Positions 22,775 through 49,214 of a stretch of DNA of 64,000 nucleotides are shown here, piece by piece. Both the position numbers and the translations under genes were made by a program. The stretch lies in IMG/VR virus record IMGVR_UViG_3300044797_000098, positions 1-64,000 of that record. One strand, 5' to 3'. Each line of letters opens with the position of its first letter. The stretch's first letter is position 1. The notes beneath the pieces were generated by a model. The model was given only the letters and a program-made list of their open reading frames with translations. It had not been told where the DNA came from and searched no databases.

Positions 22775-22829
22775 TGTCTTTCTCCTATTGGTTTATGTAA
22801 TGGTATCTAATACCTTAGACCGACTTCTA

Positions 22830-26732: not shown

Positions 26733-26750
26733 TGTGATTGTCTTTCGTTG

Positions 26751-29437: not shown

Positions 29438-29516
29438 GACCTATTCTCCTTCATGTCGGACTGAATTGTCCGCCACCACACCCATACACATATGCACGGA
29501 TGCGGTAGCAGAAACT

Positions 29517-29942: not shown

Positions 29943-29948
29943 TACCTC

Positions 29949-30293
29949 TCAGTTGCAGCACCAAGTGTCCCATTCCACACCCTTCACAACAACCGTCGGA
30001 CTCGGATGCACACATCCCGATTGAGGAGCAACACCACCATCCACAGGACTACTACATAGATACAATCCCTTCGCGCACACATAGATTTGATCACTCGTGG
30101 GCTGACCCTGATCCAATGTGCAACTGATATGAGCACTACCAGCGTCGGGAGTTTTTGCTTCTTGCACAACCATATCAACCGATTCACCAACAGTATCAAC
30201 TGGGCTCGAACAAGCAACAACCGAACCAAACAACACACTCATCACAATGAACTTCATTTCGCTCTCCTTCAATTCACAAAACAGTAAATACAA
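29949..30293 (-). CDS. Cys-rich lipoprotein
   Basis: Lipobox VVAC, PDAG and VDGG motifs, paired cysteines. Confidence 0.6.
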   Translation of the reverse strand: MYLLFCELKESEMKFIVMSVLFGSVVACSSPVDTVGESVDMVVQEAKTPDAGSAHISCTLDQGQPTSDQIYVCAKGLYLCSSPVDGGVAPQSGCVHPSPTVVVKGVEWDTWCCN

Positions 30294-30742
30294 AACAACA
30301 TAAGCCCAAACAAAAACGATACAATCATATCCTCCTTCAATGCAGGAGGAATTAGTGTATCATGCTCAGACTCATCTATCAATCTCTCAAACACAACCGT
30401 ATCAGTATTGGCTGGAATGCTAACCGCTTCCGTCAATGTCGCTGGGGGTAGAATTAGATTGCTCATTTACATTGTCCTTTCATGTGTGTGTATAATTGAA
30501 TTACATGCCATGACACCCAGTGAAGGATGCCATAGCATATACGTCAATCAATCTTGCTGAGATCAACAATCTCAGTCGAGAACCCAAGCAACTTATAATC
30601 GCTGGCTTGACTTTGTGCCAATTCAAGATAGTGCCATACGTAAGCCTTCTTGATGTCAAGAGTCCAAGTTATTTCACAACTGTCATTTCTTTCGTACTTA
30701 TTACCATGCTTGATGACAAAACCCTTCATGAGTATCTCCTAA

Positions 30743-33745: not shown

Positions 33746-34249
33746 CTAAACATAGTGTGATAGTTCCTTACCAACAATTGCTTTGATTAGTTGCAAGCGC
33801 TCAACCTCGTAGATATTCTCATAGTCTGGTTCAAATATACCTTCACCATTGCAGTTATCGCACTTGATCTCGTCGCCTTCGTCATTGACGATCATACCAG
33901 ACTTATCGCATACCGGGCAATCTTCATATTGCGGTTCTGAATCAGAATAGTCCTCGCACATGACATCGATATACAACTTCGATGGCAAGTCTTCCAATGC
34001 TTCTTTGATTGCAATACAGGCTTCCTCAAAACTAAACCCGCTCCACTCATTCTCATTGCCATGCTCGTCAGTCGCTGGCGCACAACAATCACTCGCACAT
34101 GGCGGACCGAAGTGTAAATCATAATTAGCAAGACGAACCGCTTTTGCAACTTCTGCATCGAAGTGCTGTTTGCGATAGTCTTTTGCGAATGTCTCCAATA
34201 CTCTGTCGTATGCTTTATTCATTGTTCTAAAACCTCCAATCCAGCACAC
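33746..34249 (-). CDS. Hypothetical protein with DnaJ-like zinc finger
   Basis: CPVCDKSG...CDNCNGEG. Confidence 0.6.
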   Translation of the reverse strand: MCWIGGFRTMNKAYDRVLETFAKDYRKQHFDAEVAKAVRLANYDLHFGPPCASDCCAPATDEHGNENEWSGFSFEEACIAIKEALEDLPSKLYIDVMCEDYSDSEPQYEDCPVCDKSGMIVNDEGDEIKCDNCNGEGIFEPDYENIYEVERLQLIKAIVGKELSHYV

Positions 34250-34276
34250 ACGTGTGTATGTGCTGGCGCAGAGACG

Positions 34277-34669
34277 TTAGACTTCCGTATTCAATGCAAT
34301 ATCAAAACTCTCGTAGATGTAGTCTTTGATGCCGTTCCTGTTTCTACCAGAAACCGTCATATGAACACCGTGGAATGACGGAGATACTCTGACAACATGC
34401 TCTGTCCAACCATCATATGATCCGTTCTCATCCATATGATGATATGCCGTACAAAAGACAAGCCTGTTATTACTAACCTCTAAATCAATTTTAGTACCAC
34501 TATCAAAACCCGACCCCGAGGGAAGATGATTACGAACAAGTTCTTCAATCTTTTCCTCGAGCTTCAACTTCCACTCGGAATTGAACCCATCAATGCAATT
34601 CAATCTCGCCTGAACCAACATTGCAAGTTTAGCGTATAGTTTCATCATTACTTCCTTTCCGGCTTGCAT
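34277..34669 (-). CDS. Hypothetical phage protein
   Basis: 130 aa, co-oriented. Confidence 0.6.
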   Translation of the reverse strand: MQAGKEVMMKLYAKLAMLVQARLNCIDGFNSEWKLKLEEKIEELVRNHLPSGSGFDSGTKIDLEVSNNRLVFCTAYHHMDENGSYDGWTEHVVRVSPSFHGVHMTVSGRNRNGIKDYIYESFDIALNTEV

Positions 34670-35254
34670 GCTTTGCGGAAACGATCCTCATCGAAGTTAG
34701 GATTGTCCGATTGAAAGAATAGAACGAATGCATTCTCAACGGCAATGGGCGCTCGACAATCATACACCGTTTCACCATCCTGATGCCTTATCGCGAATAC
34801 ATCAGTCATGTAGAGATCTTGCACCATCTTCGCTGCCTTATTGTAATTCTTCTTCATCATCATGATACTTTCTCCTTTGCCAACATAACGCTGAAACCAA
34901 TAGTGGTGATTATAACAATACCAACCCAGAACCCAGCGAATCCATATGAATGCTCGCTAATATCCAAGCCGGTATTGATACAGCCAATTAGAATCAATGT
35001 CATATCAACCGTGGCGAATAGATGCTTCATTGCTAATTCCTATTGATGATTGTAATATTATACTCCGCTGATCTCTTTGCCTTCTTGTATCTCACATTCA
35101 AGTAGAATGCAACTGATGCAACCTTGTCTCTACACATGTAGAGTGCGAACTTGCTTCTGTATTCTGGAAGAATCGTATATGTGTTCATAGCTCTTTCCTC
35201 GTTTCAGAATGCTCATTACCGCCCATGCATATACACGGGCGGGATATGAACACA

Positions 35255-35689
35255 CTAAATGTAGATCATTCCATTGTCGCCAACATAACAATCAACTTCA
35301 CCATACGCTTGTGCGTTAGTATGCAGGCGATCCCTAACATCTTCATCGATGTAGTCCCTATCTTGGAAGCCTACTCCGTGCCTGTTTCTCGTCAAAAACA
35401 AGTCGTGCCCACACTGCTCTTTCCCACTCCAATTACCATCATTCGTGCGCCGATACGGAATCGTTGCAATATCAGACGCATTCTCCTCTTGGAACTTCTT
35501 GCAGTCCGCAACGATCTTGATCATAGCAGACTCCGCAATGTCGTCAATCGAATAATTCTTGTCGAGGGGAACGTCATCGTCATCGCAGGATGCCCATAGC
35601 ATGGCGTCCACGTAGGCTTGTGTAAAACTGTCAATCTCATTCCATACGCTCATTGTTCCACCTTGTATTGGAAGTGTTGTTCTCCCCAA
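35255..35689 (-). CDS. Hypothetical phage protein
   Basis: About 130-144 aa acidic protein, GHD...TRNRHG.GF motif. Confidence 0.6.
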   Translation of the reverse strand: MGRTTLPIQGGTMSVWNEIDSFTQAYVDAMLWASCDDDDVPLDKNYSIDDIAESAMIKIVADCKKFQEENASDIATIPYRRTNDGNWSGKEQCGHDLFLTRNRHGVGFQDRDYIDEDVRDRLHTNAQAYGEVDCYVGDNGMIYI

Positions 35690-36042
35690 CCATTGATGTC
35701 AGCATCATCCCACTTCAATATTAGGATGCCATTCTTGATAGCAAGAACCTCACCAACTCCATTGTATCTAATCATCAATCGATCGCCAACCTCTGCGGGG
35801 CTATCTTTGAACACAATGATCTTATGACCATTACCAGCAGTGTGCATCTCGCATCTAATCGTTTTTGCTTCTCTCTTCATGGGAGATTGCATGAGAAACT
35901 CAATGGCACGTTCAAGTTTTAGACATGCCTCTCTTGCGTCCTGAACATTCTTGACATCAATATCCAATTCTGGATACTTATTACAAGGATGCCCGTTATC
36001 ATCCAATACTTCAATTGGAATCTTAATTCTGAACGTTGCCAT
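35650..36042 (-). CDS. Hypothetical protein
   Basis: GGAG RBS; its upstream region is split by the tnpB copy 3 insertion. Confidence 0.6.
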   Translation of the reverse strand: MATFRIKIPIEVLDDNGHPCNKYPELDIDVKNVQDAREACLKLERAIEFLMQSPMKREAKTIRCEMHTAGNGHKIIVFKDSPAEVGDRLMIRYNGVGEVLAIKNGILILKWDDADINGWGEQHFQYKVEQ

Positions 36043-36155
36043 TGCAATCTCCCTTGTTATTAGAATTGTTGCTATTATAAGGCGTCCCAGAAAAAATCGA
36101 CATCTAACCGAAAAATACTTGACATTTTCTACTACTATCGTTATATATAAGAGTA

Positions 36156-37364
36156 ATGCAACGAACGATCTCTATCAAAATTGACGCACCAGCAGAGTTT
36201 TTAGATTACCTAAAAGCTTGCAACGAGCTATACAGCAGGTATGTTGAATGGTGTTTCGAGACCAAGAGCTACAATAAGAATAAATCTCATACCGAGCTAT
36301 ATGAAAAGTTTCGTCAGGAGTTTCCAAGTATCAATTCTGCCACCATTCAGTGTATTAGAGATAATGCACTTGAAAGCGTCAAGGCATTGAAATTCAAATT
36401 CAAGCCGAAAAAGAAGCCACATTCTCATATTCGTTTTGATAAGAGAACGATCGCTCTTCGAGGTGATCAACTATCGTTTGCATGGTCAGGTGATCGTATC
36501 AAACAGATCATAAAGATACCAGAGTTTTTCAAAAAACGATATGGATCTTGGAAGTTTCAGGCAGCAACAATAGGCTATAATAAGCATAAGAAGCAATTCG
36601 TTGCTAATCTGATTTTTCAATCAACTGCTCCGCAGGAGCTTCGCTCTTCTGCTCCGCAGGAGCTTCGCTCTTCTGCTCCGCAGGAGCTTCGCTCTTCTTC
36701 ACCTGAAAAGAAAGGTGATCGTGTAGTTGGTATCGATCGTGGACTGTATAACATAGTGTCTCTATCTGATGGTTTCAAGTATGCTTCCAATCAGGTCAGA
36801 AAAGTGAAACGAGAAGTCTTGTTTCTCAAAAAGCAACTTCAAACAAAAGGCACCCATAGTGCTAAACGCAAATTGAAAGCGTTGTCTTGCTATGAGAAGC
36901 GGTTTAGTTTGAATGTCAATCATATCATCAGTAAATTGTTAGTTTCGTTGCCATACGATATTTTTGTTCTCGAAGACTTGAAAGGTATTCGTAAGCAAAA
37001 ATCAAAAGGCAAACGACTAAACAAGTGGCTTGCTAACTGGTCATTTTGGCAATTAGAGGCTCTTCTGGGATATAAGGCAGAGATATTTTGCAAGCAAATT
37101 GTCAAAGTCGATGCTCGATATACCAGTCAAAAGTGCTGCAATTGCGGTCAAGTAGAAAAAGCCAATCGTGATGGCTCACATTACCACTGTGAGCGTTGTG
37201 GATTTAGGTGTCATTCGGATACGAATGCTGCTAAAAATATCCGCAATAACTATCTCATCTCTGCTGCTGAAAAACAGAAGGCAGAGCAGGCTATGTGTCA
37301 ATTAGCCGAATGCTTCGTATCGAAAGATACAGAAACAAGCCCCGTTGCTTTTAGCACGGGGTAA
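36156..37364 (+). CDS. tnpB: TnpB RNA-guided nuclease, copy 3, with a 3x APQELRSS insertion
   Basis: GIDRG, LEDL, HSDTNA RuvC motifs and zinc finger; right end CAAGCCCCGTTGCTTTTAGCACGGGGTAATTGA. Confidence 0.93.
   Translation: MQRTISIKIDAPAEFLDYLKACNELYSRYVEWCFETKSYNKNKSHTELYEKFRQEFPSINSATIQCIRDNALESVKALKFKFKPKKKPHSHIRFDKRTIALRGDQLSFAWSGDRIKQIIKIPEFFKKRYGSWKFQAATIGYNKHKKQFVANLIFQSTAPQELRSSAPQELRSSAPQELRSSSPEKKGDRVVGIDRGLYNIVSLSDGFKYASNQVRKVKREVLFLKKQLQTKGTHSAKRKLKALSCYEKRFSLNVNHIISKLLVSLPYDIFVLEDLKGIRKQKSKGKRLNKWLANWSFWQLEALLGYKAEIFCKQIVKVDARYTSQKCCNCGQVEKANRDGSHYHCERCGFRCHSDTNAAKNIRNNYLISAAEKQKAEQAMCQLAECFVSKDTETSPVAFSTG
36625..36696. repeat. Three tandem copies of the 24-nt hairpin element
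   Basis: (CTGCTCCGCAGGAGCTTCGCTCTT)x3. Confidence 0.95.
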
Positions 37365-37643
37365 TTGATTAGAATGCTTTCTACCGCACACATGCGTTTG
37401 CACATATGCATGCGGAGGAAAGAATGCTAACGGTTATTACTTCCCCATCCATAGTCTTTATCAAGACCAAACGAACACTCTGCCTCTGCAACTGCGCCAT
37501 GCGCGATGCCAGCAATCTCCCTATAACTATATCCAAGTGCAGAATACTTCTTGATGACAGCGAGAACGGCATTGAATACTTCGCCAGAAACATTCAATGC
37601 GTCTTGTTCATACTTGTCATTCTTATTGAATAATGACTTACGT

Positions 37644-38465
37644 TCACTCATCTTCGTTCTCCTCATATTCATCTACGTTAACACCGCATTCAATACAGCA
37701 TGTACCGTTCGGCGTATCCTGTAAGTCTTTCGATCCGCAGTGAGGACAACTGCTACTATCTTCCTCTTGTTCGCCATTGAAGATTGGCATCTCCTCTTTC
37801 GCAATGAAGACACTCCACGTAGAATAGAACTGGCTATTCTCATCGAGATTGAATAGGAATCTCGTGATACCTTTCTCCTGCAATTCCTTTGCGATCTTCT
37901 TTGGATCCGCAGTCTGACCAGAATGCCAACCGCTCTCTAATCTCTCTTGCGCGCACACATACCCATGGTCAGCGGGATTGATTGATTCAATCGTATTACA
38001 CCTATTCGGATCTCCTTCAAGATCCTCCAAGTGTTTCTCGGGATCATTCGAGATACAAACACAACACAAGATCTCACCATCTCCCACAACGAAGTTCGGC
38101 TGCCACGAATAACTATCGGGCGACGTGCGAATCATCTTTCCGCAATCGCTGCAACTGCTAACTTCATCCGACCATTCCACATTGACGCCCATCTTCTCGA
38201 AGATATTACATAGACGGGAAGGAAGATCGGATATGACAACACGGCTATTACTCGCACGATCATACACGTCTACGTTATTCCAGTTCGCCACAATATATAT
38301 ACAGTCATCGTCGCCCGGCTCACTGCTTTCCGTGTAGATTTGAATACCGTCAATATGATCGCTAACTTGGTATGTGCCAAGTTCCTTGTCCTTCTTCTCT
38401 GCCATCACACGGGCAATCTCCAAGATACGTTCCACACGTGCAAACAACTTCTTGGTATCAGTCAT
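37644..38465 (-). CDS. Hypothetical acidic protein with zinc-ribbon motifs
   Basis: 273 aa, CSDCG, CCVC, CPHCG...CIECG. Confidence 0.7.
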   Translation of the reverse strand: MTDTKKLFARVERILEIARVMAEKKDKELGTYQVSDHIDGIQIYTESSEPGDDDCIYIVANWNNVDVYDRASNSRVVISDLPSRLCNIFEKMGVNVEWSDEVSSCSDCGKMIRTSPDSYSWQPNFVVGDGEILCCVCISNDPEKHLEDLEGDPNRCNTIESINPADHGYVCAQERLESGWHSGQTADPKKIAKELQEKGITRFLFNLDENSQFYSTWSVFIAKEEMPIFNGEQEEDSSSCPHCGSKDLQDTPNGTCCIECGVNVDEYEENEDE

Positions 38466-39634
38466 TGTAGATCTCCTTCTTTCGTCTTGCGTCTTTCATA
38501 CGTCGCTCGCGCCTATCACGAAAGACTTGCTTCTTGCCGGTATTAGCAAGAATCATTCCACGTGCTACATTCGATTGCTTTTTCATGATTGTTTCCTTAT
38601 TCCTGCACACACTTGCATGTATGCAGGGTAGAAAGAATCAATCCTTATTAGTCTTCCAGTCCAAGTGCATCGCGCATCTTCCATTGCACTTCTTGCTTCC
38701 CAGCAGCATATCCTTTGCTATGTGCATCATCCACAATACGACTGATGAACTTCGTTGCAGACATATGGGAAAACTTTGCTTTCTCTTCCTCTGTTTCTCC
38801 ATCGGCAACGGCGTCTTGCTATCAACCCATACCAACGAAGACTTGCAAGCGGTTATTGAAGTGTGGCACATTATCCTTCCTTAAGCGAGCGGAGCGTATA
38901 TCCACACATTCCGCTGTTGTGTATTCCAGTGTGCGACCAAGTCGTAAAACTCTGACTTTGTCATATACACACGTGTCTCCTTATCGCCTCTCCTACCACT
39001 CGGTAGGTGCAACCACATGTATCGGAATGTATTCATGGACTTACCTCAATGAATGATCTGATACGGATGCCCGTCGGGATTGTGTAGATTCGTTTGCTCA
39101 TCGGCTTCGATGTCATATTCGCCAGACACTTCCCACGTTGCAACAATCTTGAATATCTTGGTCATTGTTATTCTCCGATGTGTGTTGTGTTGAATGCTTA
39201 TTGCTGCACACGCATTACCATGTGCAGACATAAGAATGCAACTAACTTACTTACCGTATGCGACTTTCAGACTCAATGCCAGAAACACCAAACACAACAA
39301 CATCGTTCCATTGACATACATAACACTCGTATGAATGCCAACCGTGCTAAGGAACGGAAGGAAGATACAGGCAATCCAAGTCAAGGCGAACGCACATACA
39401 CATGCGAAGACGAACTTCATTGTCATACTCCTTCGATTGGATCAAGCCATGCAGCATGTTCAATCAGCAACATAGCAAGATGTCTCGCTTCGCTGGGAGA
39501 CATATGCACATGTGCTGCGTTTTGCAAGTAGTTGGAAGACGTGAATGTCGCTACAACATTCTTGGTCTCACGGCTTGTAGAAACAACATTATGTCCATGA
39601 CTAAGTGTCATCTCACCGAATGTAATCGTTCTCA

Positions 39635-39961
39635 TCAGTGTTCCAGTCCTTTCATTTCCTCCATACCTCGCCACACACAGATATGCTCATGTCGTGGCAT
39701 AAACTCATCTTCGCCACATGCATAGCCGTCTGCGCAGCAGTTGTATTCGCCGTTCTCACCAATCTTACCTTGTGGGTCTTTCTGATGACAACGATGCCAA
39801 CCGACAACGAATCCCGTTTGCTTGGCATTGGCGCAAGGGATCTCCGGTGCTTCCTCACGATCGCCAGCCGAATTGAACACCGGATGGCTTTGGCTCGCAC
39901 ATGCAAGCATGCACACCGGAATGATGACAGAAAGAATGGTCTTGATTGCTTTGGTATTCAT
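39635..39961 (-). CDS. Cys-rich lipoprotein
   Basis: Lipobox MLAC. Confidence 0.55.
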   Translation of the reverse strand: MNTKAIKTILSVIIPVCMLACASQSHPVFNSAGDREEAPEIPCANAKQTGFVVGWHRCHQKDPQGKIGENGEYNCCADGYACGEDEFMPRHEHICVWRGMEEMKGLEH

Positions 39962-40374
39962 TGTTATATCTCCTATGTTGTTATCTGTTGTTGCTTGGCG
40001 GATATGGCGCTAAGATGTATAGCGCACACATAATGGCAATTCCGTGTCCCCCACTTTGATGTAGGAGAGCGTAATACGCCACTCATCGCACAACTGCCTA
40101 TTGTCTCCACCAGTATCCCATGTGGTCAAGCCAATATGCTTGCTTTGGCTTGTCGGGCGTTTCCATACTCGTGTTTTCCACACTCCACTTACCCACACGG
40201 TTTCCATTGACGTCTTGGATACCACGAGTAATCATCTCACCACACTCATCCTCACACGTCTCCACATACTCGTTGTCTTGAATACGTTGTGCGACCTTCC
40301 GCAATGCGGAAGCAAGATCATCACTTCCACACATACTAGAGTTTCCCAATTCGATTGTCAGTTTGAATATCATG

Positions 40375-40635
40375 TTATCCTACCTCTGCGTGGACTTCCT
40401 CACATTCACTCTTCGGCTCTCGCTTTGGCTTTGGCGACCATTCCTCATAGACAACACGTTTCGTCATAAGAGACATTGGATCACCGCAACAAGTGAATAC
40501 ATGCTCTTTCGGATATAGGAAGTAGTCTCCGCTATTCGCACTAAACGTACAACCACATTCACCCGTGCACATAAGGAATGGCTCAGGATAAATCCTATTA
40601 CTTGTAAGGTCAGGTAAGTCTTTGACTTTCACCAT
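40375..40635 (-). CDS. Zinc-finger hypothetical protein, paralog of 41999..42451
   Basis: MV.VK.LPDL...CGECG..SANSGDYF shared. Confidence 0.6.
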   Translation of the reverse strand: MVKVKDLPDLTSNRIYPEPFLMCTGECGCTFSANSGDYFLYPKEHVFTCCGDPMSLMTKRVVYEEWSPKPKREPKSECEEVHAEVG

Positions 40636-41234
40636 ATTAGTATCCTTTCACATACTCGACCATATCTTGATCGGTTTTAGCGTTGTATGTACTGCCATTC
40701 GGAAGCATCACACACCATCCAATGGCTTGTGAGTTTTTGCGTACAGTCAAGTCTTTCGTGCGCGCTTGAATGATTGCAACCTTAATCCTTTTAGGATCCA
40801 TTGTCTTACTCCTCAATCGAGAAGGTGTAGATACTTACTTCCTCGCCATCATCCTTAAGGACGTCTACAACATCCCACGACCGGCTTCCTACTTCTTCTA
40901 GTAGAATGCCGGAGAATGCCGGATATGTAAGTCCTTTCCCGGGCTTGCTTGTGCGCGCTCTCACACTGACACGATAGAATCTTTCAAGGAACACGTAATC
41001 ATGATCATACTCATCATATTCATTGTGCTCAACCATCTTACATACTCCTCTCGTGAACCTGCTGTACCATCATTGCATGCGCGTACATGTTAGCAAGCAA
41101 TGGCTCCAAGTACATACCAAGCGCAACACCACACACAAAAACGAGAAACGTCTTCATTATATCCTCCTTGCTTTTCCAACATTGCACACGTATCCCTACA
41201 TGTGCAATAGCAGAATATCAAGGCTCTTACAGTT

Positions 41235-41813
41235 TTAGAAAGCGATCATACACATTGGAGAACCCACGCTATTAGGGGTGTATGACTGATATGGGAACAC
41301 AAGTCCGTTCTTAGCGAAGTACTCATCACCAATACCGACACTGGTGGTAATGTAGTCAATGTTATCCTTTCCTTTCATACCACCTTTCCTGTTAGGACGG
41401 AAGAAGGTGAAGAAGATGGCTCCCTTGTACTTGTTAGCCTCACATGTGCTGAATACGTCTGCTAGAATCTCCGTACCTTTCTCCACACCAGCGCACAAGT
41501 CTACATTGATGCTTGCAATGTTCGCTTTGCCATACGTTTGGAACGCCCATCGTACCGTCTCTTCGATGGTATTCTTAGGTGAGAGAGTAGCACCGAGTCT
41601 ACTTGCCATAGCCCGCGCAACATAGTCCACGTCGCAAGCAATGATGTTAGAAGGTTTGATGCCGTGGTCAATTAGGTGCCTAATATCTCCGCACTTACGA
41701 CTTGCAATGACAATGTGTTTGCCAGTGAGAAACTGGCGCCGTTGTACTCGGCTGTATGCAAGTGCACGTGCAGCAGTCTTTTGAGGCGACATATCGGTTT
41801 TATATAATGCCAT
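41235..41813 (-). CDS. Putative class I SAM-dependent methyltransferase-fold protein (start MALYKTD)
   Basis: IVIASRKCGD...IIACDVD...INVDLC pattern resembles Rossmann motifs I, II and IV. Confidence 0.45.
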   Translation of the reverse strand: MALYKTDMSPQKTAARALAYSRVQRRQFLTGKHIVIASRKCGDIRHLIDHGIKPSNIIACDVDYVARAMASRLGATLSPKNTIEETVRWAFQTYGKANIASINVDLCAGVEKGTEILADVFSTCEANKYKGAIFFTFFRPNRKGGMKGKDNIDYITTSVGIGDEYFAKNGLVFPYQSYTPNSVGSPMCMIAF

Positions 41814-41829
41814 GTGCAATTCCTCCTGA

Positions 41830-41884
41830 GGTTTCAATCCCCACGACAATACCTCATGTGAGATATTGTCATAGACACGGAAAC
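41830..41884 (-). repeat. 55-nt intergenic hairpin, copy 1
   Basis: Near-identical to 44413-44467; 14-bp stem; starts GTTTC and ends ATTGAAAC(C). Confidence 0.85.
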
Positions 41885-41998
41885 AACGCAATGATCAAGG
41901 CTTCCTAAGATATGCTCGTGCTTCCTTCAATGTATCAAAAGACTTCCACACATGCTTACCTTGTACGTCCAACCCCACCACATGGTACACACCATGCC

Positions 41999-42451
41999 TC
42001 ATTGAAAGAGTCTTGCCCCTATTCCTCTGTATATACCCACATGAGAACGCATACCGCGTGAGACTTGTATCAGCATTAAAGTACATACACTTACGTCCCA
42101 CCCCTCCGACGTTCCGGCATCTTCCAGCAGAACACCGGAGAATGACGGATATGTAAGACCTTCTCCAACACGAGGAGGAGTAGTTCCGAACTGTCTAACT
42201 TGCACACGATCGCCCTTGTGTAGTTCTTTGGGTTCCGGTGTAGTCTTCTTCGGTTCCCATTCCTCATACACAACACGTTTCGTCATAAGCACCATCGGTT
42301 CACTACAACACATGAATACATACTCATGTGGGTAATTGAAGTAATCTCCACTATTGGCAGAATACTCTGCACCACATTCACCGCATGATAGAAACGGTTG
42401 TGGGAAGATGTTCGTGCCAGTAAGGTCAGGTAGATTCTTTACTCGCACCAT
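41999..42451 (-). CDS. Fusion paralog of 40375..40635 and 40806..41036
   Basis: N-terminal half matches the first, GLTYP.FSG.LLE matches the second. Confidence 0.6.
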   Translation of the reverse strand: MVRVKNLPDLTGTNIFPQPFLSCGECGAEYSANSGDYFNYPHEYVFMCCSEPMVLMTKRVVYEEWEPKKTTPEPKELHKGDRVQVRQFGTTPPRVGEGLTYPSFSGVLLEDAGTSEGWDVSVCTLMLIQVSRGMRSHVGIYRGIGARLFQ

Positions 42452-43519
42452 CTTACAGGCTCCTTGTCAGGTTCAATAATGCGAATGCTGCGCGCATTAT
42501 CTGACAGTTCGGGATAGTTTCACTTATTGGGAACACCTCATCCCCAACGTAGATCCTTGCGTCTTTTTGATTCTTACTCCAAGCGCTACCATCCCAATAC
42601 TGCCATGGCATACCTTGTGTCAGGATGACATACTCGGTAGTATTCGCTGGGCGTTTGCCTCTTGCAGTCTTACGGTTCGTCATCTTTATAGGCTCCTTTC
42701 GGTAATCTGCCCGACTTGTCCCATCATTGCATGCGCGTAGGCGTTCGCAAGTAGGGGTTCGAGATACATTCCAATAGCAATGCCACATACGAATACAATG
42801 AAGGTTTTCACTTGATGATCCCCTTTGCCACGGAAAATGGTGCGTTGTAAGTGATTGTGCTGCACTTGTCGCAGTCGTGCGCATACTTGGGCTTACCAAC
42901 GCTTTTCATCTTACCCTCTCCAACGTCATATTACATTCCCCTTCTTTGGAGTGCCTCTCCCATCATTATGATTGCATGTAGGAGAATTGCGGTTTCTTGG
43001 ATACGTTGTCGGAGGTTATCAATCTCCGGATTAGTTGGAAGTGTCTGCGTTGCATTGTAGTTCTCCCTATTGAAACAACCTACCACCGATTCGACGTGGT
43101 GGGATGTGTGATGTTTGACGCACAATGAGATTGCTGCTGTCAATGTATGCGTCTTTTCCACCAGTACGCCTGTATGCGCCAACGGCAACGGGAGCGCCTC
43201 TTGAACGCTTATTGTTTCCGGCGGGGTTCAATCCTAATGCCGTTTGCTGAGCCGTAATTGGCTTGTGGCTCGTTTTTGACGCATCAAGGAAGTTTAGCGC
43301 CAAGTCAATGAAAGTCGTTTTATAGAGGCAATTAGACGCATCCGTTGGCGCGGTCTCGGAAAGAACAACATCACCCGTAGTCGTATCTTTGATTATGTAG
43401 AACCACATTGTCGTACCTTTGTGATATTGGGGAGATAGTTCCCCACCCCCGTATCCAAACACCTACATGCTTAGACACGGGAGTAGAACCTTATCTCTTT
43501 ACTTACAGAGACTTACTTT

Positions 43520-43825
43520 TCACGCATCGGAATCGAGGTCGAGCACTTCCACGGCCTTCTTGGCGGTCTTCTCCGACTTCGGAGCATACCCACGCAGGAA
43601 GTTGCTGTTTCCCGACTTGCCCCCACCAACTACGGGCGTTAAGGTTTTTCCTTCCGCCTTGAAGTTAGTGGTACCCTCGGGCAGACTTGACGACATCGTG
43701 GCGACAAGCTCGCCCATCTCCGTACCAATGGCGTCGATCTCCGACTCCAATTCAGCTCGGCGATCGGCAAGCGACTTGTAAGCATTGAACGCGGTCTTAA
43801 GGGCAATGACGTTGACAGTAGACAT
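43520..43825 (-). CDS. Coiled-coil hypothetical protein (start MSTVNV), downstream of a hammerhead
   Basis: Paralog of 10520..10795. Confidence 0.65.
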   Translation of the reverse strand: MSTVNVIALKTAFNAYKSLADRRAELESEIDAIGTEMGELVATMSSSLPEGTTNFKAEGKTLTPVVGGGKSGNSNFLRGYAPKSEKTAKKAVEVLDLDSDA

Positions 43826-43865
43826 GTGTGTATCCAACTTTCTTGTATGACGTTTCAAGACAACT

Positions 43866-43929
43866 GGTCTCATCAGGACGTGAATTATTACACGTCTACG
43901 CATATGCTTTTGACATATGCGTTTCGACC
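43866..43929 (-). ncRNA. Hammerhead ribozyme, type II (HHR-1)
   Basis: GGUC-GAAA-CGCAUAUG..CAUAUGCG-UA|GACGUG..CACGUC-CUGAUGA-GACC: complete core and three stems. Confidence 0.92.
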
Positions 43930-43937
43930 TTGAAAGT

Positions 43938-43965
43938 GTTATAGCAAGCGTTTAGATTCGTGCAA
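43938..43965 (-). promoter_or_regulatory. Sigma70-like promoter directly upstream of HHR-1
   Basis: TTGCAC-16 nt-TATAAC with an extended -10 TG. Confidence 0.55.
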
Positions 43966-43972
43966 GCAGTTT

Positions 43973-44374
43973 TTAGATGGCTCGCGAACGATACCGTCCG
44001 CACGCAACGTTATCCCACAACTTCTCCACCTTCACACCATAAGCGCCATTGCCGGTATTGTGTCTAGAAAGCAATGACACAATGTAGTTAGGCGAGTATC
44101 TTCCAGCGAAGTGTTTGATTAGATCTTGCGGAGTGGTATAACTGATACCCTGGCTTTCACGTGCACACATGAAAGCGTGCATCTCCTTCTCAACTGCCTT
44201 AGGAGGACTCATGTCAGAGACGTTCACATTCGGAAACGTTTCCTCCTGTTCTACCACATTAGCCACCGACACCTTACTCGTGCCAATACTCTGGATGAAG
44301 GTACGAGCAAGATCCTTATGCCCACCACTGAGGAGAAGAGTAAGAATCTGTAGGTTTGCGTCGTTGAGATTCAT
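43973..44374 (-). CDS. Hypothetical protein, possibly winged-helix
   Basis: 133 aa; C-terminus TTPQDL...YIVSLLSR...GRY. Confidence 0.5.
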   Translation of the reverse strand: MNLNDANLQILTLLLSGGHKDLARTFIQSIGTSKVSVANVVEQEETFPNVNVSDMSPPKAVEKEMHAFMCARESQGISYTTPQDLIKHFAGRYSPNYIVSLLSRHNTGNGAYGVKVEKLWDNVACGRYRSRAI

Positions 44375-44412
44375 TGGTATGTGTGTCCTTGTATGTTGTT
44401 CGTTGTATATTG

Positions 44413-44467
44413 GGTTTCAATACCCACGACAATACCTCACATGAGATATTGTCATAGAGACGGAAAC
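44413..44467 (-). repeat. 55-nt intergenic hairpin, copy 2
   Basis: Near-identical to 41830-41884. Confidence 0.85.
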
Positions 44468-45542
44468 CTTTCCCTTACAGCGTATGCGTATACCTTCCAA
44501 CATCCTTCACATACTCACTAATCGTATACGCACGCACATTGCTTTCGCCTAACTCCTTTGTCCAGAAACTGATTACCTTATCCAAGGTATGACCACTGTT
44601 GTCATGAACGGTGCTATTCAGCACCGAATGTGCTCCGTTCTCCTCAACATCACACACAAGCGTATGATGGCATCCGTTGAACCGATCCCAATATATCGTC
44701 GCTACTGTTCGCATATGATATCCTCTTCTCCCACAATGTCGTATGACTCGATTATGTCGTTATCAGATAGAGCAAACGCAACGGCGTCTCTCCAATCTGC
44801 AACTACGGAATCCTCCTTCACTTTCGCATCTTGTAAGTTTAGGAGCCTAAGATGCAACAACATCATATCAGATGCTACATCCTGCGCTTTCTCCCACGCT
44901 TCCAACGTTCGCTTACAAGGGTTCTCCTTGTAGGTTTGCATGTATGCTTGCACGCGAAGCCTGCTTACTTCCAAGGCTTCAAGCGTCGTTTGACCCGTGT
45001 GTAGTGTGATAGCATTCATTGGCTCACCAGCCAATAGCAGAGAAACAACCAGCCACCCCATGCACACACATGAGGCGCGTAGTATGCAATCTTGGAATAC
45101 ATTGTGATCCTTTCGGGCAATGACTGAATTACCCAACAATATCCTACACATACGTATGCATAGGATATTAGTAGATACGTCAGTTCTTACTTACACCGTC
45201 TCCCAGCGCACATCCTTGACCCTCTGTTGTAGGCTGGTATCGTACATGTACGCCTCTTCGTCTTGGCTCCAATCGGTCAATTGTAGGAGACGTGGAAGAG
45301 CTTTGCGCGCTTGTGCGAGCTTGGGATACTGCTTATCAATACTCCTACCCGACATGACGTGTGTGATGGCATACCCCGGCTTATTGAACGCGCGGGTTAT
45401 GATGAGATGTCGCATCTTGGAGTACCGTGTGGTCTTTTCCCACACGAATTCCCCGCTGTCGGACTTCTCGTTAGTGATCACGGTAAAGGTGAGAGGGCGT
45501 CGTTTCATGTAGGTTTCTCCGTGTTGTGCATTCGTTGTGCAT

Positions 45543-45648
45543 GGTCTCATCAAGCGAGACTTACAGTCTCGCCCAATGCCTACCTTTCGGTAGTCATCAG
45601 TTAGGGCATAACCCTAATACATACAGGGACTTACCTGTATGTTTCGAC
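45543..45648 (-). ncRNA. Hammerhead ribozyme, type II, interrupted by a 47-nt insert (HHR-2)
   Basis: GGUC-GAAA-CAUACAGG..CCUGUAUG-UA|UUAGGG..CCCUAA-CUGAUGA-[insert]-UGAUGA-GACC. Confidence 0.7.
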
Positions 45649-45662
45649 CTTGTCTTGTAGTA

Positions 45663-46211
45663 TTAGAGCGTGACGGGGATGGTAATGTGCGACACCGCCT
45701 TCCGTGCGATTGACCGACCGTCAATCTTGAACCCTAGATCCTGTAGTTTTTTCACCTGCACGGCAGTATTGCTCGTTTCGAGAATACCTTGTAGGTCATT
45801 CACCGACACCTTGATACTCGAATCGAAGGCACCCATACGCGCCTTCAAGCTCGCAGAAAGACCGTCATACTCCGCCTTTTCCTTACGAAGTGCAATGATG
45901 TGGGTTTCGAGCACAACGTTGAGTGCTTGTCGCACCTTCTGCTCGGCTTCATTCTTCGCGCGTTGCTGTACCGTTGCAAGTGCGTTGATTGCCCGCACAC
46001 ACACCGTCCCGATGTCGTCGAATGTAAGCTTGTCGAACGATGGGTTAAGATTGCCACCTTTCCCCGCATCCCAGCACAAGGCATGCAATGCGCGGAAGTG
46101 TGCGGTAATCTCCGCGATCTGCTCACCGTTGAACTGTTTCGGCGCTTTCTTTTCTTCCTTTTCGGCAGAGGGAACGACAGTGGCAACCGTGGTGGTATTG
46201 TTCGTGGTCAT
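45663..46211 (-). CDS. Hypothetical helical protein (likely start MTTNNT)
   Basis: GGAG RBS before MTT; coiled-coil composition. Confidence 0.65.
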   Translation of the reverse strand: MTTNNTTTVATVVPSAEKEEKKAPKQFNGEQIAEITAHFRALHALCWDAGKGGNLNPSFDKLTFDDIGTVCVRAINALATVQQRAKNEAEQKVRQALNVVLETHIIALRKEKAEYDGLSASLKARMGAFDSSIKVSVNDLQGILETSNTAVQVKKLQDLGFKIDGRSIARKAVSHITIPVTL

Positions 46212-46500
46212 GTGAGTGTATCTCCTATGTTGTGTTGTTTGACTTTCGAGCTTATTGCCCGACAATGTATGCAAGACTATGATCTTACACACATTAGCAG
46301 ACACTCAAGCCTTACAGGATGAAGTTCTTTTCAGTGTATTCTTTCGTCTTAGCTCGTTTCCCGCTAAGTCTCTTGGTAGCCTTGCTGCTCATTCCTACCC
46401 TATGCGTCATATGGTAGCGGATATCCCGTATCTGCTTACTTGTGAGCGTTTTGCACTTATCGCATAGACAATTGCTTGATTGTAGGATTAGACACTTCAT

Positions 46501-46629
46501 TCATCCACCCTTGTGCAGCCATCGGCTACTTGTAAACGTATGCCGTAGTTTCTTGCTCGGGCGCACACCACCTTTCCAGTGTGCTACATGTGCTCTCTTG
46601 AAGGTTAGCCGTTTCTTCTTTATCACCAT
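46501..46629 (-). CDS. 42-aa basic peptide (not in ORF track)
   Basis: MVIKKKRLTFKRAHVAHWKGGVRPSKKLRHTFTSSRWLHKGG; SD GAGGAG 7 nt upstream; stop abuts the next ATG. Confidence 0.55.
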   Translation of the reverse strand: MVIKKKRLTFKRAHVAHWKGGVRPSKKLRHTFTSSRWLHKGG

Positions 46630-46633
46630 TCCC

Positions 46634-46695
46634 GATCTCCTCAGTGTGCGCCTAACGCACATACCGCCCTAACAGTGTTAGGAGCGGTTTCGATC
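46634..46695 (-). ncRNA. Hammerhead ribozyme, type II (HHR-3)
   Basis: GAUC-GAAA-CCGC..GCGG-UA|UGUGCG..CGCACA-CUGAGGA-GAUC. Confidence 0.88.
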
Positions 46696-46869
46696 TTGCC
46701 GACATTGTTAGCGTCTAGCCGGTATAGGCTACTTGTGATAGCCGTATGGTATAGTATTAGATTGTGGTATTATCTGCTTTCTTTGCACTCGCGCCTAGCG
46801 TTTCTTACTTCCCTATCTCGTCGCGCTTTGGCTTACAATATCACTTTCCGCTATCAGAGCCGATAATGT

Positions 46870-47328
46870 AGTCTAGTTGCTTCCCTTGGGAATACAACGA
46901 CAACATTGTGGCATAAGCGGGGACCATGTAAGACAATCGCCGAACCGTAGAATTAACCTTCTAGGTGCGATATGTCGTATCGTTAGAATAGAGACTGTCT
47001 ACTAGGTACACTTCCGATATTAGCGACTTTGCCTTACCTATCTTACCTACAGCGACTAGACCTTACAAGGTCATACCCCAAGGGGTATTGGTCGGCACTG
47101 TAGCGGGATAAGGCTTTCAGACTGCTTGCCAGTCTTCGCCCTGCTAAAACGGGTATTCCGTCGTATGCTCTACCTTAGGCGACATGTGGCAGACCCACAC
47201 CGTTCTAAGGTTTCTAACGCTAGTGTAGGAGCTACCTACTTGTTCCGTTTCCCCACTAGCTACTGCGGGGTGCTATCTAGAGAGAACGGCGGGCGGTTGA
47301 ATTACTTTAGGCCTCGCGGGGCTTTTTT
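46870..47328 (+). ncRNA. Candidate structured non-coding RNA
   Basis: Nested stems ending in a perfect Y junction (47031-47114), further hairpins, and a terminator-like end. Confidence 0.45.
47311..47328 (+). terminator. Putative intrinsic terminator
   Basis: GCCTCGCGGGGC followed by TTTTTT. Confidence 0.45.
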
Positions 47329-47419
47329 CTTCGCCCCTACCGTTCCGCTCTCGACAGATAGACTATATTGCAGACGTTGTGCCATGGCATATGGATCGGA
47401 TAAGTATATGATATTATTG

Positions 47420-48470
47420 ATGTAGGGAAAAGACTTAGTATGATCTTGCTGTCTCGGTTTTAAGAAAAACCAATGAGATCATAACGTTGGACGATCATAG
47501 GGTATGCAAAGATTGCGGTGTGATAATGTGGGATAGTGTTGCTTCGGTCTAGGAAGCGTTCGGAGCGCTCGGGATATCTCGGCAAGGGTAGCAGGGGGAA
47601 AACGCTTCCTAGCTGGCACCTAGCGCCAGCAAACGGCAATGCTCGAAGGCAGGGTGCGGGCGCTCGACGTTGGCTGGAATGTAGTTGCTGGTAGGGAGCT
47701 CCGTCAGGATGTAGTACAATGTAGGGAAAGGTGGGTGGTTCCGTTCTTGCAATGATGCACAAGTTATGCCAAGTCGACGGCTCGTTTCTTGCAATAGGTT
47801 CAGGTGGGATAACGGAATACATACGATACAGACTTCCCTACATACTGAACGGTTGGCACTGGCTGAACCGTTGAACGTATAGTGTAGGGTGAGCAGTGTC
47901 GTATGTAGGAGATCAGTGGATGATGTAGTATGATTGTTGCGAGGTCAAGTATAGGTCAAGTGCTTATCACGTATTGGTCAACAACAACTCACTGATAACG
48001 CAATGTAGGATAACAGGAGAGATGTAGCCGTCTCAACACCATTGGATTACCTGAACAAGATGTAGGAGAATAGGGAGAAAGGTAGGTAGAGGTAGGGAGG
48101 AATTACAGCGATACGGTTGGCACGGTTCTTGGGGGTTGGCGGGAAAGGTAGCCAGAGGTGGGATGAATGCTGACAGGGGAAAGGTGGGATGATGTGAGAT
48201 GTTCAGGTGGTGTGATGTAGGGGAGACGGGGAGATGTGGCAGCTTGGTGCCTAGTGTAGGGGGAACGCAGGGCGTATAGCCGGAGTAGCGGGTTGGAAGA
48301 CAATGTATGATATGTAGTGAAAAGAAAGGAAATGTAGTGGAATGTAGAATGATGTAATAGTTGTAAAGAAGTGGAATGAAATGGAGGGAAAGGTGGGAGA
48401 CGGTGGGAGGAATGGAGGGGATGTGGTGAGGTATCGCGTAAGGTGTGGCGGTGTGGGGTAATGTGGGCCT
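47420..48470. other. Purine/G-skewed non-coding tract at the GC-content junction
   Basis: 50 of 60 bases are purines at 48361-48420; 11 co-oriented GTAGG. Confidence 0.7.
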
Positions 48471-48845
48471 CGTTAAATAATAGAACGGTACCAAAACGAA
48501 TCAATACAATACTATCAAACGGTAGCAAACAATATAAAACAAAATAATCTGAATACAACATCAAACAATAGCAACAATTAATAATAACCAATAAAACGGT
48601 TGTAATAAATATAACAACTACATCAATAACAATAGTTTATCTAATCGTTCCTCTGTTATATCCTCTGGCAATAAATAATCAAGAAATACACTAGGCTTGT
48701 CATCATCAGCATATTCAATAAGGGTTGATTTACTATCAATAAACGATGTAATGCAACTATCGAATTCAGCAACTGCGATTGAATCATTATATAATATATC
48801 CTGTACTATATGTAATGGTATATTAGTTAAATATATCTTTATCAA

Positions 48846-49214
48846 TCATTTTGATGCCCAGTTCTTATATACCAAAATTACCCATTCTTTAAACTCTTTT
48901 ATTGTTTTATTATGTTTAGCATAATTACAAAACTTACAACAAGGAACAAGATTGCTCTTTGTATGTGGTAAATTGCTATCCACTCTATCTAATCCATTAT
49001 ATATAAATGTCCCATTAGATCTTGAATTTTCCGATGATTCTGAACTTGAAAGAAACTTGTTGTACTTTTGTTTTGGTTTAATTCCACAATAATAACATTG
49101 TTGTTGAGACAGAGTATAAAAATCATCAAAAGACAAATCATCATCTTTATATCTATCATAATAGATCTTTTTTGCACTAGAAATAATAGGTGAAAATACC
49201 TTTTTCTTTACCAT
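48846..49214 (-). CDS. HNH-type endonuclease
   Basis: CYYCG...GLDRVDS...H..SN.VPCCKFCN. Confidence 0.75.
   Translation of the reverse strand: MVKKKVFSPIISSAKKIYYDRYKDDDLSFDDFYTLSQQQCYYCGIKPKQKYNKFLSSSESSENSRSNGTFIYNGLDRVDSNLPHTKSNLVPCCKFCNYAKHNKTIKEFKEWVILVYKNWASK

What the first reader, a model, noticed from the sequence alone, without database searches (positions are those of the whole stretch)
46700..48620. Abrupt compositional junction, probably a genome end or terminal-repeat boundary
Seen in sequence (hand counts): 33/60 GC at 45901-45960, 24/60 at 32401-32460 and 12/60 at 52321-52380. GC rises toward the head of the minus-strand early array, then falls after about 48480 across ~1.9 kb with no convincing gene. 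Established: in T5- and SPO1-like phages the first-injected terminal region carries small host-takeover genes with host promoters. Inference: this is that boundary, with the early arm adapted to a higher-GC host.
Basis: partly seen in the sequence, partly recalled or inferred. Interest (0 to 1): 0.6.

Follow-up and report, generated by a model that had tools for sequence, protein, structure and literature searches.

The report
Jumbo phage GC sawtooth reset point
The abrupt GC drop at about 48.47 kb is real and conserved: it is the single reset point of a genome-wide, one-sided composition gradient in a 406-kb peat jumbo phage, and the "empty" 1.9 kb beside it holds a phased array of DNA binding-site repeats, a promoter-like site and a previously undescribed ~720-nt structured RNA, though whether it is a physical genome end could not be tested.

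Summary
GC falls from 0.49 to 0.29 at 48,473 (support 48,468-48,499), the largest GC step in the 406,470-bp contig. It is not a chimera: a second assembler's contig crosses it, a second peat sample holds both sides, and two related phage lineages have the same syntenic junction.

The junction is more than the edge of an island. Going leftward from it, across the contig break that a relative bridges, GC3 decays from about 0.48 to about 0.21 (rho -0.67; length constant about 88 kb), and intergenic GC decays too. The share of clade-core genes rises from 5% to 60-90%. A distant relative (G002) shows the same sawtooth.

The gene-free 1.9 kb holds:
- A-rich repeats
- a 1.1-kb array of 21 co-oriented, ~10-bp-phased RTGTRG sites
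- a sigma54-like -24/-12 box
- a ~720-nt RNA with compensatory base-pair changes and no Rfam match

My best reading (inference, confidence about 0.35) is a fixed anchor of a polar DNA process, most likely pac-type packaging initiation running leftward. The T5/SPO1 terminal-repeat reading is unsupported in its specifics: no DnaA boxes, no excess of host-type promoters, no contig ending at the junction. Physical ends need raw reads.

The parts
1..48473 (-). Higher-GC arm (43-49% GC; GC3 0.42-0.48). It holds mostly small minus-strand ORFans, three TnpB genes, a Cas12f/TnpB-like gene with a CRISPR-like array, and a helicase plus methyltransferase. About 29% is non-coding by a crude ORF call. On the joined map it continues into the 370-406 kb tail of the contig.
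45663..46304 (-). 213-aa ORF with no family match. It is conserved in both relative lineages (64-71% aa) and is the third ORF downstream of the RNA.
46312..46500 (-). 62-aa basic ORF, 92% and 79% identical in the relatives, no family match.
46501..46629 (-). 42-aa very basic ORF with a GGAG ribosome-binding site, directly after the RNA. It is 98% and 78% identical in the relatives and has no family match.
46640..47358 (-). ~720-nt structured RNA, either free-standing or a long 5' leader of the small-ORF operon. It has many local hairpins with GNRA loops and is single-copy. Identity is 97.4% to the L007 type and 80.4% to the L008 type. The ends are estimated from conservation and from the promoter-like box.
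47369..47384 (-). Sigma54-like -24/-12 element, TGGCAC-N5-CTGCA. The GG and GC boxes and their spacing are invariant in three lineages while the spacer varies. It is one of only two such minus-strand matches in 406 kb.
47400..48473 (+). G-rich array (G 0.32, C 0.14 on the + strand) of 21 co-oriented RTGTRG(G) sites, spaced mostly at 10, 20 or 30 bp. One G-quadruplex motif lies at 48,386-48,420. It is not protein-coding.
48474..48617 (.). AT-rich (about 26% GC), A-rich stretch with four ~15-nt AAACGGTAGCAA-type words. It starts the low-GC domain and lies between the array and the stop codon of the last body ORF.
   Evidence: (family D8)
48618..49214 (-). The last two ORFs of the AT-rich body before the junction: 75 aa, and 122 aa with a weak HNH match.

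Best explanation
SHOWN. The junction at 48,473 is a conserved landmark of a clade of jumbo myoviruses that carry nearly all genes on one strand. It is the single reset point of a one-sided, genome-wide gradient. Going leftward from it (through the arm, across the contig break and into the rest of the genome), GC at synonymous and intergenic sites decays roughly exponentially, and gene content shifts from lineage-specific to clade-core. Immediately to the right of the junction, composition is already at the AT-rich floor.

The 1.9 kb without protein genes is a cis-acting control region. Read in the direction of transcription (right to left) it holds A-rich short repeats, a 1.1-kb array of about 21 co-oriented, helically phased RTGTRG(G) sites (the signature of a protein bound repeatedly on one face of the DNA), a sigma54-type promoter candidate, and a ~720-nt structured RNA that opens the first transcription unit of the arm.

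INFERRED, and my committed mechanism. The junction is the fixed starting point of a polar DNA transaction, most likely the first (pac-type) cut of a headful packaging series that runs leftward, with the phased array as the recognition site. DNA just left of the cut would then be the segment most often terminally redundant and at molecule ends. End-driven recombination would fall off with each successive headful. GC-favouring repair and easier gain and loss of genes in that zone would then build the sawtooth and the plastic arm.
For: 1. The junction is real and not a misjoin. A 36.8-kb Logan contig spans about 37.3-74.1 kb with no differences, and a second peat sample holds both sides at >=99% identity.
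2. The same low-to-high GC jump, with a G-skewed block, lies at the syntenic place in two relative lineages across six further contigs.
3. The sawtooth: GC3 is 0.48 at 0-15 kb and 0.19-0.23 at 300-405 kb, rho -0.67, P 2e-55. It is still rho -0.57 at 50-250 kb with the arm left out, and the fit is 0.21+0.29exp(-d/88 kb).
4. Intergenic G+C falls from 0.43 to about 0.24-0.31. In clade-core genes alone rho is -0.48. The core share rises from 5% to 60-90%.
5. G002, a distant relative with the same one-strand layout, has the same sawtooth, resetting at about 91.6 kb. G003, a mixed-strand phage, is flat.
6. The joined map is justified by relative G001, where DNA like our contig end runs on through arm-like DNA into DNA like our 2.0-8.7 kb.
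7. The array has 21 sites against 4.6 in shuffles. Of 26 close spacings, 19 fall within +-1 of a multiple of 10 (P about 7e-6). It is the only such cluster in the genome.
8. Mosaic 98-99% identical patches inside otherwise 70-80% identical arm and tail DNA suggest frequent exchange there.
9. In X2, pieces left of the junction have about twice the depth of those to the right, which is the predicted direction but is confounded by GC bias.
Against: No read-level evidence for termini or a coverage step could be obtained, because the runs are held only as contigs. The large terminase gene lies about 160 kb away and no small terminase was identified. GC-biased repair in phages is an assumption, not an established fact. 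The base changes along the gradient are not symmetric (G and C fall, A rises, T stays flat on the sense strand), although that asymmetry follows the sense strand and not one DNA strand. G002 has the sawtooth but neither the RTGTRG array nor the RNA, so these elements are not required for the gradient. In G002 the core-gene-only gradient is not significant. The three lineages pooled for the phasing statistic are homologous and so not independent.
Confidence: 0.35

Rival explanations
1. Replication origin. The phased repeats are iterons for an initiator, the adjoining AT-rich stretch is the unwinding element, and a plus-strand transcript through the G-rich block could form a primer R-loop. Unidirectional replication from here would create the polar gradient.
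For: A phased, co-oriented repeat array directly abuts a 26% GC stretch. The + strand is G-rich and carries a G-quadruplex motif. Weak sigma70-like boxes at 47,384-47,444 (+) point into the array. Along the gradient G falls and A rises on the sense strand, which equals C-to-T on the + strand.
Against: There are no DnaA boxes: 0 exact, and 1 one-mismatch match against 6.7 expected. The A/T asymmetry follows the sense strand, since plus-strand genes are also A-rich in sense, leaving little DNA-strand-linked signal. Intergenic GC loss is roughly symmetric. Cumulative GC skew shows no turning point at the junction beyond the array itself. No initiator gene was recognised nearby. G002 lacks the array.
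Confidence: 0.2
2. Purely transcriptional and evolutionary boundary. The gap is a terminator or insulator plus promoter region at the head of an accessory, horizontally acquired early arm. Its GC reflects foreign origin or early-gene codon usage, with no DNA-end role.
For: The arm carries TnpB elements, a CRISPR-like system and helicase/methyltransferase genes. Only 5-20% of arm genes are shared with G002. The arm's dinucleotide signature lies outside the body's range. Arm content is rearranged among lineages. A promoter-like box and an RNA lie at its head. The transcribed strand of the array is C-rich and G-poor over 1 kb, as in Rho-dependent terminators.
Against: The gradient continues for more than 200 kb beyond the arm. 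It appears in intergenic DNA and in clade-core genes. The obviously mobile genes have lower GC3 (0.38) than the arm's ORFans (0.46). The genes nearest the junction are the conserved ones, not the newest. The 10-bp phasing points to DNA binding, not an RNA signal.
Confidence: 0.25
3. T5/SPO1-type fixed genome end. The arm is a first-injected long terminal repeat with host-takeover genes, and the gap is an injection-stop-like region.
For: The gap is a conserved 1.9-kb protein-free region with ordered repeats at the edge of a block of small ORFans. This resembles the 1,662-bp non-coding iss region of T5 (10.1101/866236).
Against: There are no DnaA boxes. Sigma70-like promoters are not enriched. 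IMG/VR found no terminal repeat, and the contig has no end overlap. The higher-GC region spans at least 85 kb and runs on into the tail in relative G001. No contig ends at the junction. About 720 nt of the gap is an RNA gene.
Confidence: 0.1
4. Assembly chimera, or a prophage-host junction.
For: The composition change is abrupt. IMG/VR labels one relative record (G001) a provirus.
Against: An independent assembler crosses the junction, and both sides co-occur in a second sample. Three lineages share it. The arm has phage DNA on both sides on the joined map. The arm has no housekeeping genes and low coding density.
Confidence: 0.02

Closest known systems
pac sites of headful-packaging phages (P1, SPP1, P22)
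   Same: They are cis-acting sites built from short repeats that a DNA-binding protein occupies in phase. They define a unique first cut and one packaging direction, so molecule ends and terminal redundancy concentrate on one side and thin out with distance.
   Different: The array here is about 1.1 kb with about 21 sites, much larger than known pac sites. It is about 160 kb from the large terminase gene. No cut, read pile-up or small terminase has been shown. A genome-wide composition sawtooth has not, to my knowledge or in the held literature, been linked to pac sites.
Injection stop signal (iss) region of T5-like phages
   Same: Both are conserved non-coding regions of about 1.7-1.9 kb with ordered direct repeats at the edge of a block of small early-type genes (10.1101/866236).
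   Different: T5 iss lies inside a ~10-kb terminal repeat and carries about 8 paired DnaA boxes and long inverted repeats. Here there are no DnaA boxes, no terminal repeat was detected, and a third of the region is an RNA gene.
Iteron-type replication origins (lambda ori, P1 oriR, plasmid origins)
   Same: Both have co-oriented, helically phased short repeats directly beside an AT-rich stretch.
   Different: Here there are no DnaA boxes, no adjacent initiator gene was recognised, no strand-linked skew switch is seen, and there are far more and shorter repeats than in typical iteron sets.
Large ornate bacterial and phage RNAs (GOLLD, ROOL, OLE, raiA)
   Same: Size class (about 600-800 nt), many hairpins with GNRA loops, strong conservation, a phage-borne location, and unknown function (PMC12286853).
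   Different: No match to any Rfam model even at E<=10. It is known from only three closely related phage lineages. It is followed by two tiny basic ORFs and may be a 5' leader, not a free RNA.
Position-dependent mutation gradients of vertebrate mitochondrial genomes
   Same: Both show a monotonic gradient at synonymous sites with one discontinuity at a fixed replication landmark (from my own knowledge of that literature; not read here).
   Different: The mitochondrial gradients are strand-specific skews. Here the main signal is total GC in coding and non-coding DNA, and the asymmetry follows the sense strand.

Membership tests
T5-type terminal repeat / injection-stop region | Lies within a long direct terminal repeat present at both genome ends | tested here: inconclusive
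   No end overlap in the contig. IMG/VR classes the record as linear with no end repeats. Collapsed repeats cannot be excluded without read depth.
T5-type terminal repeat / injection-stop region | Clustered, paired DnaA boxes in the non-coding region | tested here: not met
   0 exact TTWTNCACA matches, and 1 one-mismatch match against 6.7 expected, in 46,601-48,700.
T5-type terminal repeat / injection-stop region | Conserved, ordered repeats in a protein-free region of more than 1.5 kb | tested here: met
T5/SPO1-type early arm | Array of strong host-type (sigma70) promoters driving small genes | tested here: not met
   4.1 near-consensus sites per 10 kb in the arm against 7-9.6 elsewhere, with no strand bias.
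pac site (headful packaging) | Short repeats bound in phase by the small terminase | tested here: inconclusive
   Phased co-oriented repeats are present. The binding protein is unknown and no small terminase was identified.
pac site (headful packaging) | Excess of read starts at the site, and a coverage step in the packaging direction | not testable with these tools
   The runs are held only as contigs. The only hint is about 2-fold higher contig depth left of the junction in X2, which is confounded by GC.
pac site (headful packaging) | Location in or next to the terminase genes | tested here: not met
   The large terminase (phrog_675) is at 208,782-210,635.
Iteron-type replication origin | Phased iterons next to an AT-rich unwinding element | tested here: met
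   The array at 47,400-48,473 abuts a 26% GC stretch at 48,474-48,617.
Iteron-type replication origin | Strand-linked skew switch at the site | tested here: not met
   The asymmetry at four-fold sites follows the sense strand. The cumulative skew is monotonic.
Sigma54-dependent promoter | GG-N10-GC (-24/-12) boxes with fixed spacing | tested here: met
   TGGCAC-N5-CTGCA at 47,384-47,369 (-). The boxes are invariant and the spacer varies in three lineages.
Sigma54-dependent promoter | Cognate enhancer-binding activator | tested here: not met
   No PF00158 match in the phage genome. A host activator cannot be assessed because the host is unknown.
Known RNA families (GOLLD, ROOL, OLE, HEARO, group I/II introns, RNase P, tmRNA and others in Rfam 15) | Match to the family covariance model | tested here: not met
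   No relevant hit at gathering scores or at E<=10 over 45,500-48,800.
Structured RNA (generic) | Base pairs maintained by compensatory changes, with no coding signal | tested here: met
   21 of 219 consensus pairs change on both sides. With a fold from the window alone, 12 of 19 doubly changed pairs stay canonical, against 1.4 expected and a maximum of 6 in 2,000 permutations. Every frame has 10-19 stops.
Horizontally acquired genomic island | Composition shift confined to the island and carried by its foreign genes | tested here: not met
   The gradient extends more than 200 kb and includes intergenic DNA and core genes. Mobile genes have lower GC3 than the arm's ORFans.

The most novel reading that the evidence does not exclude
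The composition of this phage genome records where its DNA ends fall. A pac-anchored, leftward headful series makes end recombination, with GC-favouring repair and gene turnover, decay with distance, which writes a sawtooth in synonymous and intergenic GC. If so, packaging start and direction could be read from sequence alone in uncultured one-strand jumbo phages. Separately, the ~720-nt RNA with its two tiny basic ORFs would be a new class of large phage RNA or ribonucleoprotein at the head of the arm.
Probability: 0.2. Interest if true: 0.8.

Novelty: new variant of a known kind. Interest (0 to 1): 0.66.

Why it matters
Three things would matter if confirmed.

1. A sharp reset of a genome-wide gradient in synonymous and non-coding GC is, as far as I could find, not described for phages. 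It points to a position-dependent mutational or repair process tied to a fixed site. That would offer a sequence-only way to locate packaging or replication landmarks in uncultured jumbo phages.
2. Such compositional arms mislead pipelines. One relative is labelled a provirus, and relatives' contigs break inside the arm.
3. The gap holds a large, strongly conserved structured RNA with no known family. This adds a candidate to the small set of very large non-ribosomal RNAs, in a phage that also carries TnpB elements and a compact Cas12-like system.

Tried and rejected
- **Megablast against the phage collection:** no match for either flank.
- **Alternative genetic code for the arm's low ORF coverage:** rejected. 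The apparent gain with TGA read through comes from merging small ORFs, and the TnpB, helicase and methylase genes are intact under table 11.
- **Pfam, PHROGs and NCBIfam on 30+ ORFs around the junction:** almost all are ORFans.
- **Rhizosphere runs with 12% of the sampled words:** these are only ~30-nt AT-rich chance matches.
- **Contig ends:** no overlap, and no IS-end match joins them.
- **More RNA homologs:** word scans of viral, metagenome and prokaryotic genome collections, plus profile searches of all fetched DNA, returned only the same three lineages.
- **Sigma54 activator in the phage:** none.
- **PDB sequence search with the terminase:** nothing.
- **G011, chosen because it is labelled as having terminal repeats:** uninformative. 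Its GC3 is at the floor (about 0.06) and the repeat is a 63-bp assembly overlap.
- **G007's homolog of the flanking gene:** it lies in a different arrangement and was not pursued.
- **Single-strand deamination or rolling-circle model:** considered after and downgraded after the strand control.
- **"Conveyor belt" of newly acquired GC-rich genes ameliorating with distance:** considered unlikely, because the junction-proximal genes are the conserved ones and core genes also follow the gradient.
- **Not used:** the large protein searches, structure prediction and complex prediction, because no claim here rests on them.
Full report
**Context**

The window is the first 64 kb of a single 406,470-bp contig. 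The contig encodes a tail sheath, a baseplate wedge and a large terminase and has only two tRNAs. It comes from a peat metagenome. IMG/VR classes the record as linear, and CheckV rates it 95% complete. It is a jumbo myovirus. Nearly all genes lie on the minus strand, apart from a plus-strand block at about 55-80 kb.

**The observation**

- GC is 0.43-0.50 over 1-48.4 kb and 0.24-0.35 over the next 10 kb. The body of the genome sits near 0.33 and the last 35 kb near 0.38-0.40.
- A likelihood fit puts the change at 48,473 (support 48,468-48,499), from GC 0.488 to 0.288.
- This is the largest GC step in the genome, at 5.7 sd.

**Not an artefact**

- A 36,779-nt contig made by a different assembler from the probable source run covers about 37.3-74.1 kb with no differences. 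A second peat sample holds pieces from both sides at >=99% identity. The rhizosphere "holders" are only ~30-nt AT-rich matches.
- Two related lineages carry a 71%-identical homolog of the flanking 240-aa gene. They are L007/L011/L014 and L008/L012/L013, from several metagenomes. Both show the same jump (0.27-0.32 to 0.47-0.54) with a strongly G/C-skewed block at the syntenic position, and both flanks are homologous to ours.
- No contig ends at the junction. The relatives' contigs break 4-5 kb inside the arm, within a repeated intergenic hairpin element.

**What lies in the "gene-free" 1.9 kb**

No frame in the gap is a conserved protein gene. Read right to left, in the direction of transcription, it contains four parts.

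1. **AT-rich stretch, 48,474-48,617.** It is about 26% GC and A-rich, with four ~15-nt words.
2. **Repeat array, 47,400-48,473.**
   - The + strand has G 0.32 and C 0.14.
   - It carries 21 co-oriented RTGTRG(G) sites, against 4.6 in dinucleotide shuffles.
   - Pooled over the three lineages, 19 of 26 close spacings fall within +-1 of a multiple of 10 (P about 7e-6; the lineages are homologous, so this overstates independence).
   - It is the only such cluster in the genome: 20 per kb against a mean of 0.77.
   - Helical phasing argues for a protein bound repeatedly on one face of the DNA.
3. **Promoter-like box, 47,384-47,369 (-).** It reads TGGCAC-N5-CTGCA. The two boxes are invariant and the spacer varies in three lineages. 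It is one of only two such minus-strand matches in 406 kb. The phage encodes no sigma54 activator.
4. **Structured RNA, about 47,358-46,640 (-).**
   - It is 97.4% identical to the L007 type, where flanking coding DNA is about 74% identical, and 80.4% identical to the L008 type.
   - The consensus fold has 219 pairs, of which 21 are kept through changes on both sides.
   - With a fold computed from the window alone, 12 of 19 doubly changed pairs stay canonical, against 1.4 expected and a maximum of 6 in 2,000 permutations. Local hairpins with GNRA loops are well supported. Long-range pairs are not.
   - It matches no Rfam family even at E<=10 and is single-copy.
   - Outside these three lineages it was not found in any collection or relative I could search.
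   - It is followed directly by two tiny basic ORFs (42 and 62 aa) and a 213-aa ORF. All three are conserved and none has a family match. The RNA may be a free RNA or a long 5' leader of that operon.

**The arm and the joined map**

- The arm carries three TnpB genes, a 598-aa Cas12f/TnpB-like gene beside a CRISPR-like array, a helicase and a methyltransferase, and many ORFans.
- The contig starts 5 nt beyond a TnpB stop codon, so position 1 looks like an assembly break.
- In relative G001, DNA matching our 394.7-406.3 kb continues in the same orientation through 63 kb of arm-like DNA, with GC rising from 0.35 to 0.42. It then reaches DNA matching our 2.0-8.7 kb, up to 98.5% identical.
- The arm and the 370-406 kb tail are therefore one region on a joined map, with an unknown gap. 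This fits the 95% completeness estimate.

**The sawtooth**

- On the joined map, GC3 of ORFs falls with distance leftward from the junction. In successive 15-kb bins it runs 0.48, 0.43, 0.42, 0.32, 0.37, 0.32, 0.30, 0.27 and on down to 0.19-0.23. The low values include the DNA just right of the junction (rho -0.67, P 2e-55).
- The trend holds without the arm (50-250 kb, rho -0.57) and fits 0.21+0.29exp(-d/88 kb).
- GC1+2 barely changes.
- Intergenic G+C falls from 0.43 to about 0.24-0.31.
- The share of genes with a reciprocal best hit in G002 rises from 5% next to the junction to 60-90% at 210-360 kb. Core genes alone still show the gradient (rho -0.48, P 6e-10).
- G002 is 394 kb, has the same one-strand layout, and its NAMPT is only 54% identical to ours. 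It shows the same sawtooth, resetting at about 91.6 kb through a short G-skewed patch and A-rich tandem repeats, again just before a plus-strand block. It has no RTGTRG array and no RNA. Its core-gene-only trend is not significant, because few core genes lie near its junction.
- G003, a mixed-strand 53% GC jumbo phage, is flat.

**Which process?**

- At four-fold sites of minus-strand genes, G and C fall, A rises and T stays flat (same in G002). This first suggested single-strand damage on the + strand.
- Plus-strand genes are also A-rich in the sense strand, so the asymmetry is linked to the sense strand and not to one DNA strand. The core signal is therefore a position-dependent GC gradient in both coding and non-coding DNA.
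- Codon selection by expression time does not explain the intergenic trend. Foreign origin does not explain the core-gene trend, nor the lower GC3 of the obviously mobile genes (0.38 against 0.46).
- A one-sided, roughly exponential decay from a sharp edge is what a pac-initiated headful series would give. The terminally redundant, recombining segment lies next to the first cut in the packaging direction and moves away with each less frequent headful. With a redundancy of 20-40 kb per headful, a length constant of 88 kb corresponds to a per-step continuation of about 0.6-0.8. This is my own arithmetic and an inference only.
- The model also accounts for the plastic, IS-rich arm, for mosaic near-identical patches shared with G001, and for contig breaks inside the arm.
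- The model is untested. The large terminase is far away, GC-biased repair in phages is an assumption, and no read-level data were available.

The T5 iss region is a conserved 1,662-bp non-coding stretch with ordered repeats and about 8 DnaA boxes, inside a terminal repeat (10.1101/866236). Here there are no DnaA boxes, sigma70-like promoters are not enriched, no terminal repeat was detected, and the higher-GC zone is far larger than any such repeat. I found no paper in the held library that links a GC gradient to a pac site or origin in phages. A recent preprint describes unusual terminal architectures in another jumbo phage, but they are of a different kind (10.64898/2026.10.21.760668).

**Verdict**

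The junction is a genuine polar landmark, and possibly the first-cut end, but the T5/SPO1-specific claims are not supported.
- Physical ends remain untested.
- The operators' limit on read laying was respected (5,801 letters).

Noticed in passing
window 12,092-12,489 and 12,606-14,402 (-): A CRISPR-like array (six ~36-nt repeats, period about 72-75 nt) lies directly beside a 598-aa protein whose C-terminus matches the Cas12f1-like TNB domain and TnpB models. This may be a compact phage-borne type V-like system.
   Followed up: partly
window 6-1,190 (-), 2,657-3,829 (+), 36,156-37,364 (+); genome 305,624-306,781 (+): Four TnpB paralogs (31-53% aa identity). A 37-nt IS-end word at 3,808-3,844 recurs at 306,760 and 372,289. 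The contig begins 5 nt past the stop codon of the first TnpB, so the contig start is probably an assembly break in an IS.
   Followed up: partly
window 45,124-45,190 (-); L008 and L012 copies: A ~60-nt intergenic hairpin followed by a ribosome-binding site is repeated every ~400 nt in the relatives. The relatives' contigs end inside this repeat zone.
   Followed up: partly
window 24,369-28,283 (-): A ResIII-type helicase (787 aa) sits next to an Eco57I-like DNA methyltransferase (510 aa) in the arm. This may be a restriction/defence or anti-defence module.
   Followed up: no
window 36,622-36,706; 6,683-6,815; 7,353-7,389: A 24-nt unit (CTGCTCCGCAGGAGCTTCGCTCTT) is tandemly repeated inside a TnpB gene and recurs 30 kb away.
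   Followed up: no
window 41,830-41,884 and 44,413-44,467; 40.4-42.8 kb: A 55-nt palindrome-containing repeat (93% identical) and duplicated small-gene blocks lie near the junction end of the arm.
   Followed up: no
window 59,249-61,141 (+); genome 402,465-404,929 (-): Auxiliary metabolism genes. GMP reductase/IMPDH-family and ThyX lie in the plus-strand block. NAMPT and an NMNAT-NUDIX (NadR-like) pair, plus an OmpA-domain protein, lie near the far contig end.
   Followed up: no
G001 (record of L015) 118-137 kb; genome 384,617-384,881: A ~230-270-nt element present once in our genome occurs at least six times in the relative's arm.
   Followed up: no
G002 240-250 kb (L050): A 10-kb bin has GC 0.50 but GC3 only 0.185, which gives the largest GC steps of that genome. 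It is presumably a large gene with GC-rich first and second codon positions.
   Followed up: no
G001 record (IMGVR_UViG_3300031595_000166): IMG/VR labels this relative a provirus although its higher-GC stretch is arm-like phage DNA. Compositional arms of this clade may be mistaken for host flanks.
   Followed up: no
window 1,488-1,562 (-); genome 372,830-372,903 (-): The only two tRNAs, Lys(UUU) and Ile(UAU), both read A-ending codons, and both lie in the higher-GC arm/tail zone.
   Followed up: no
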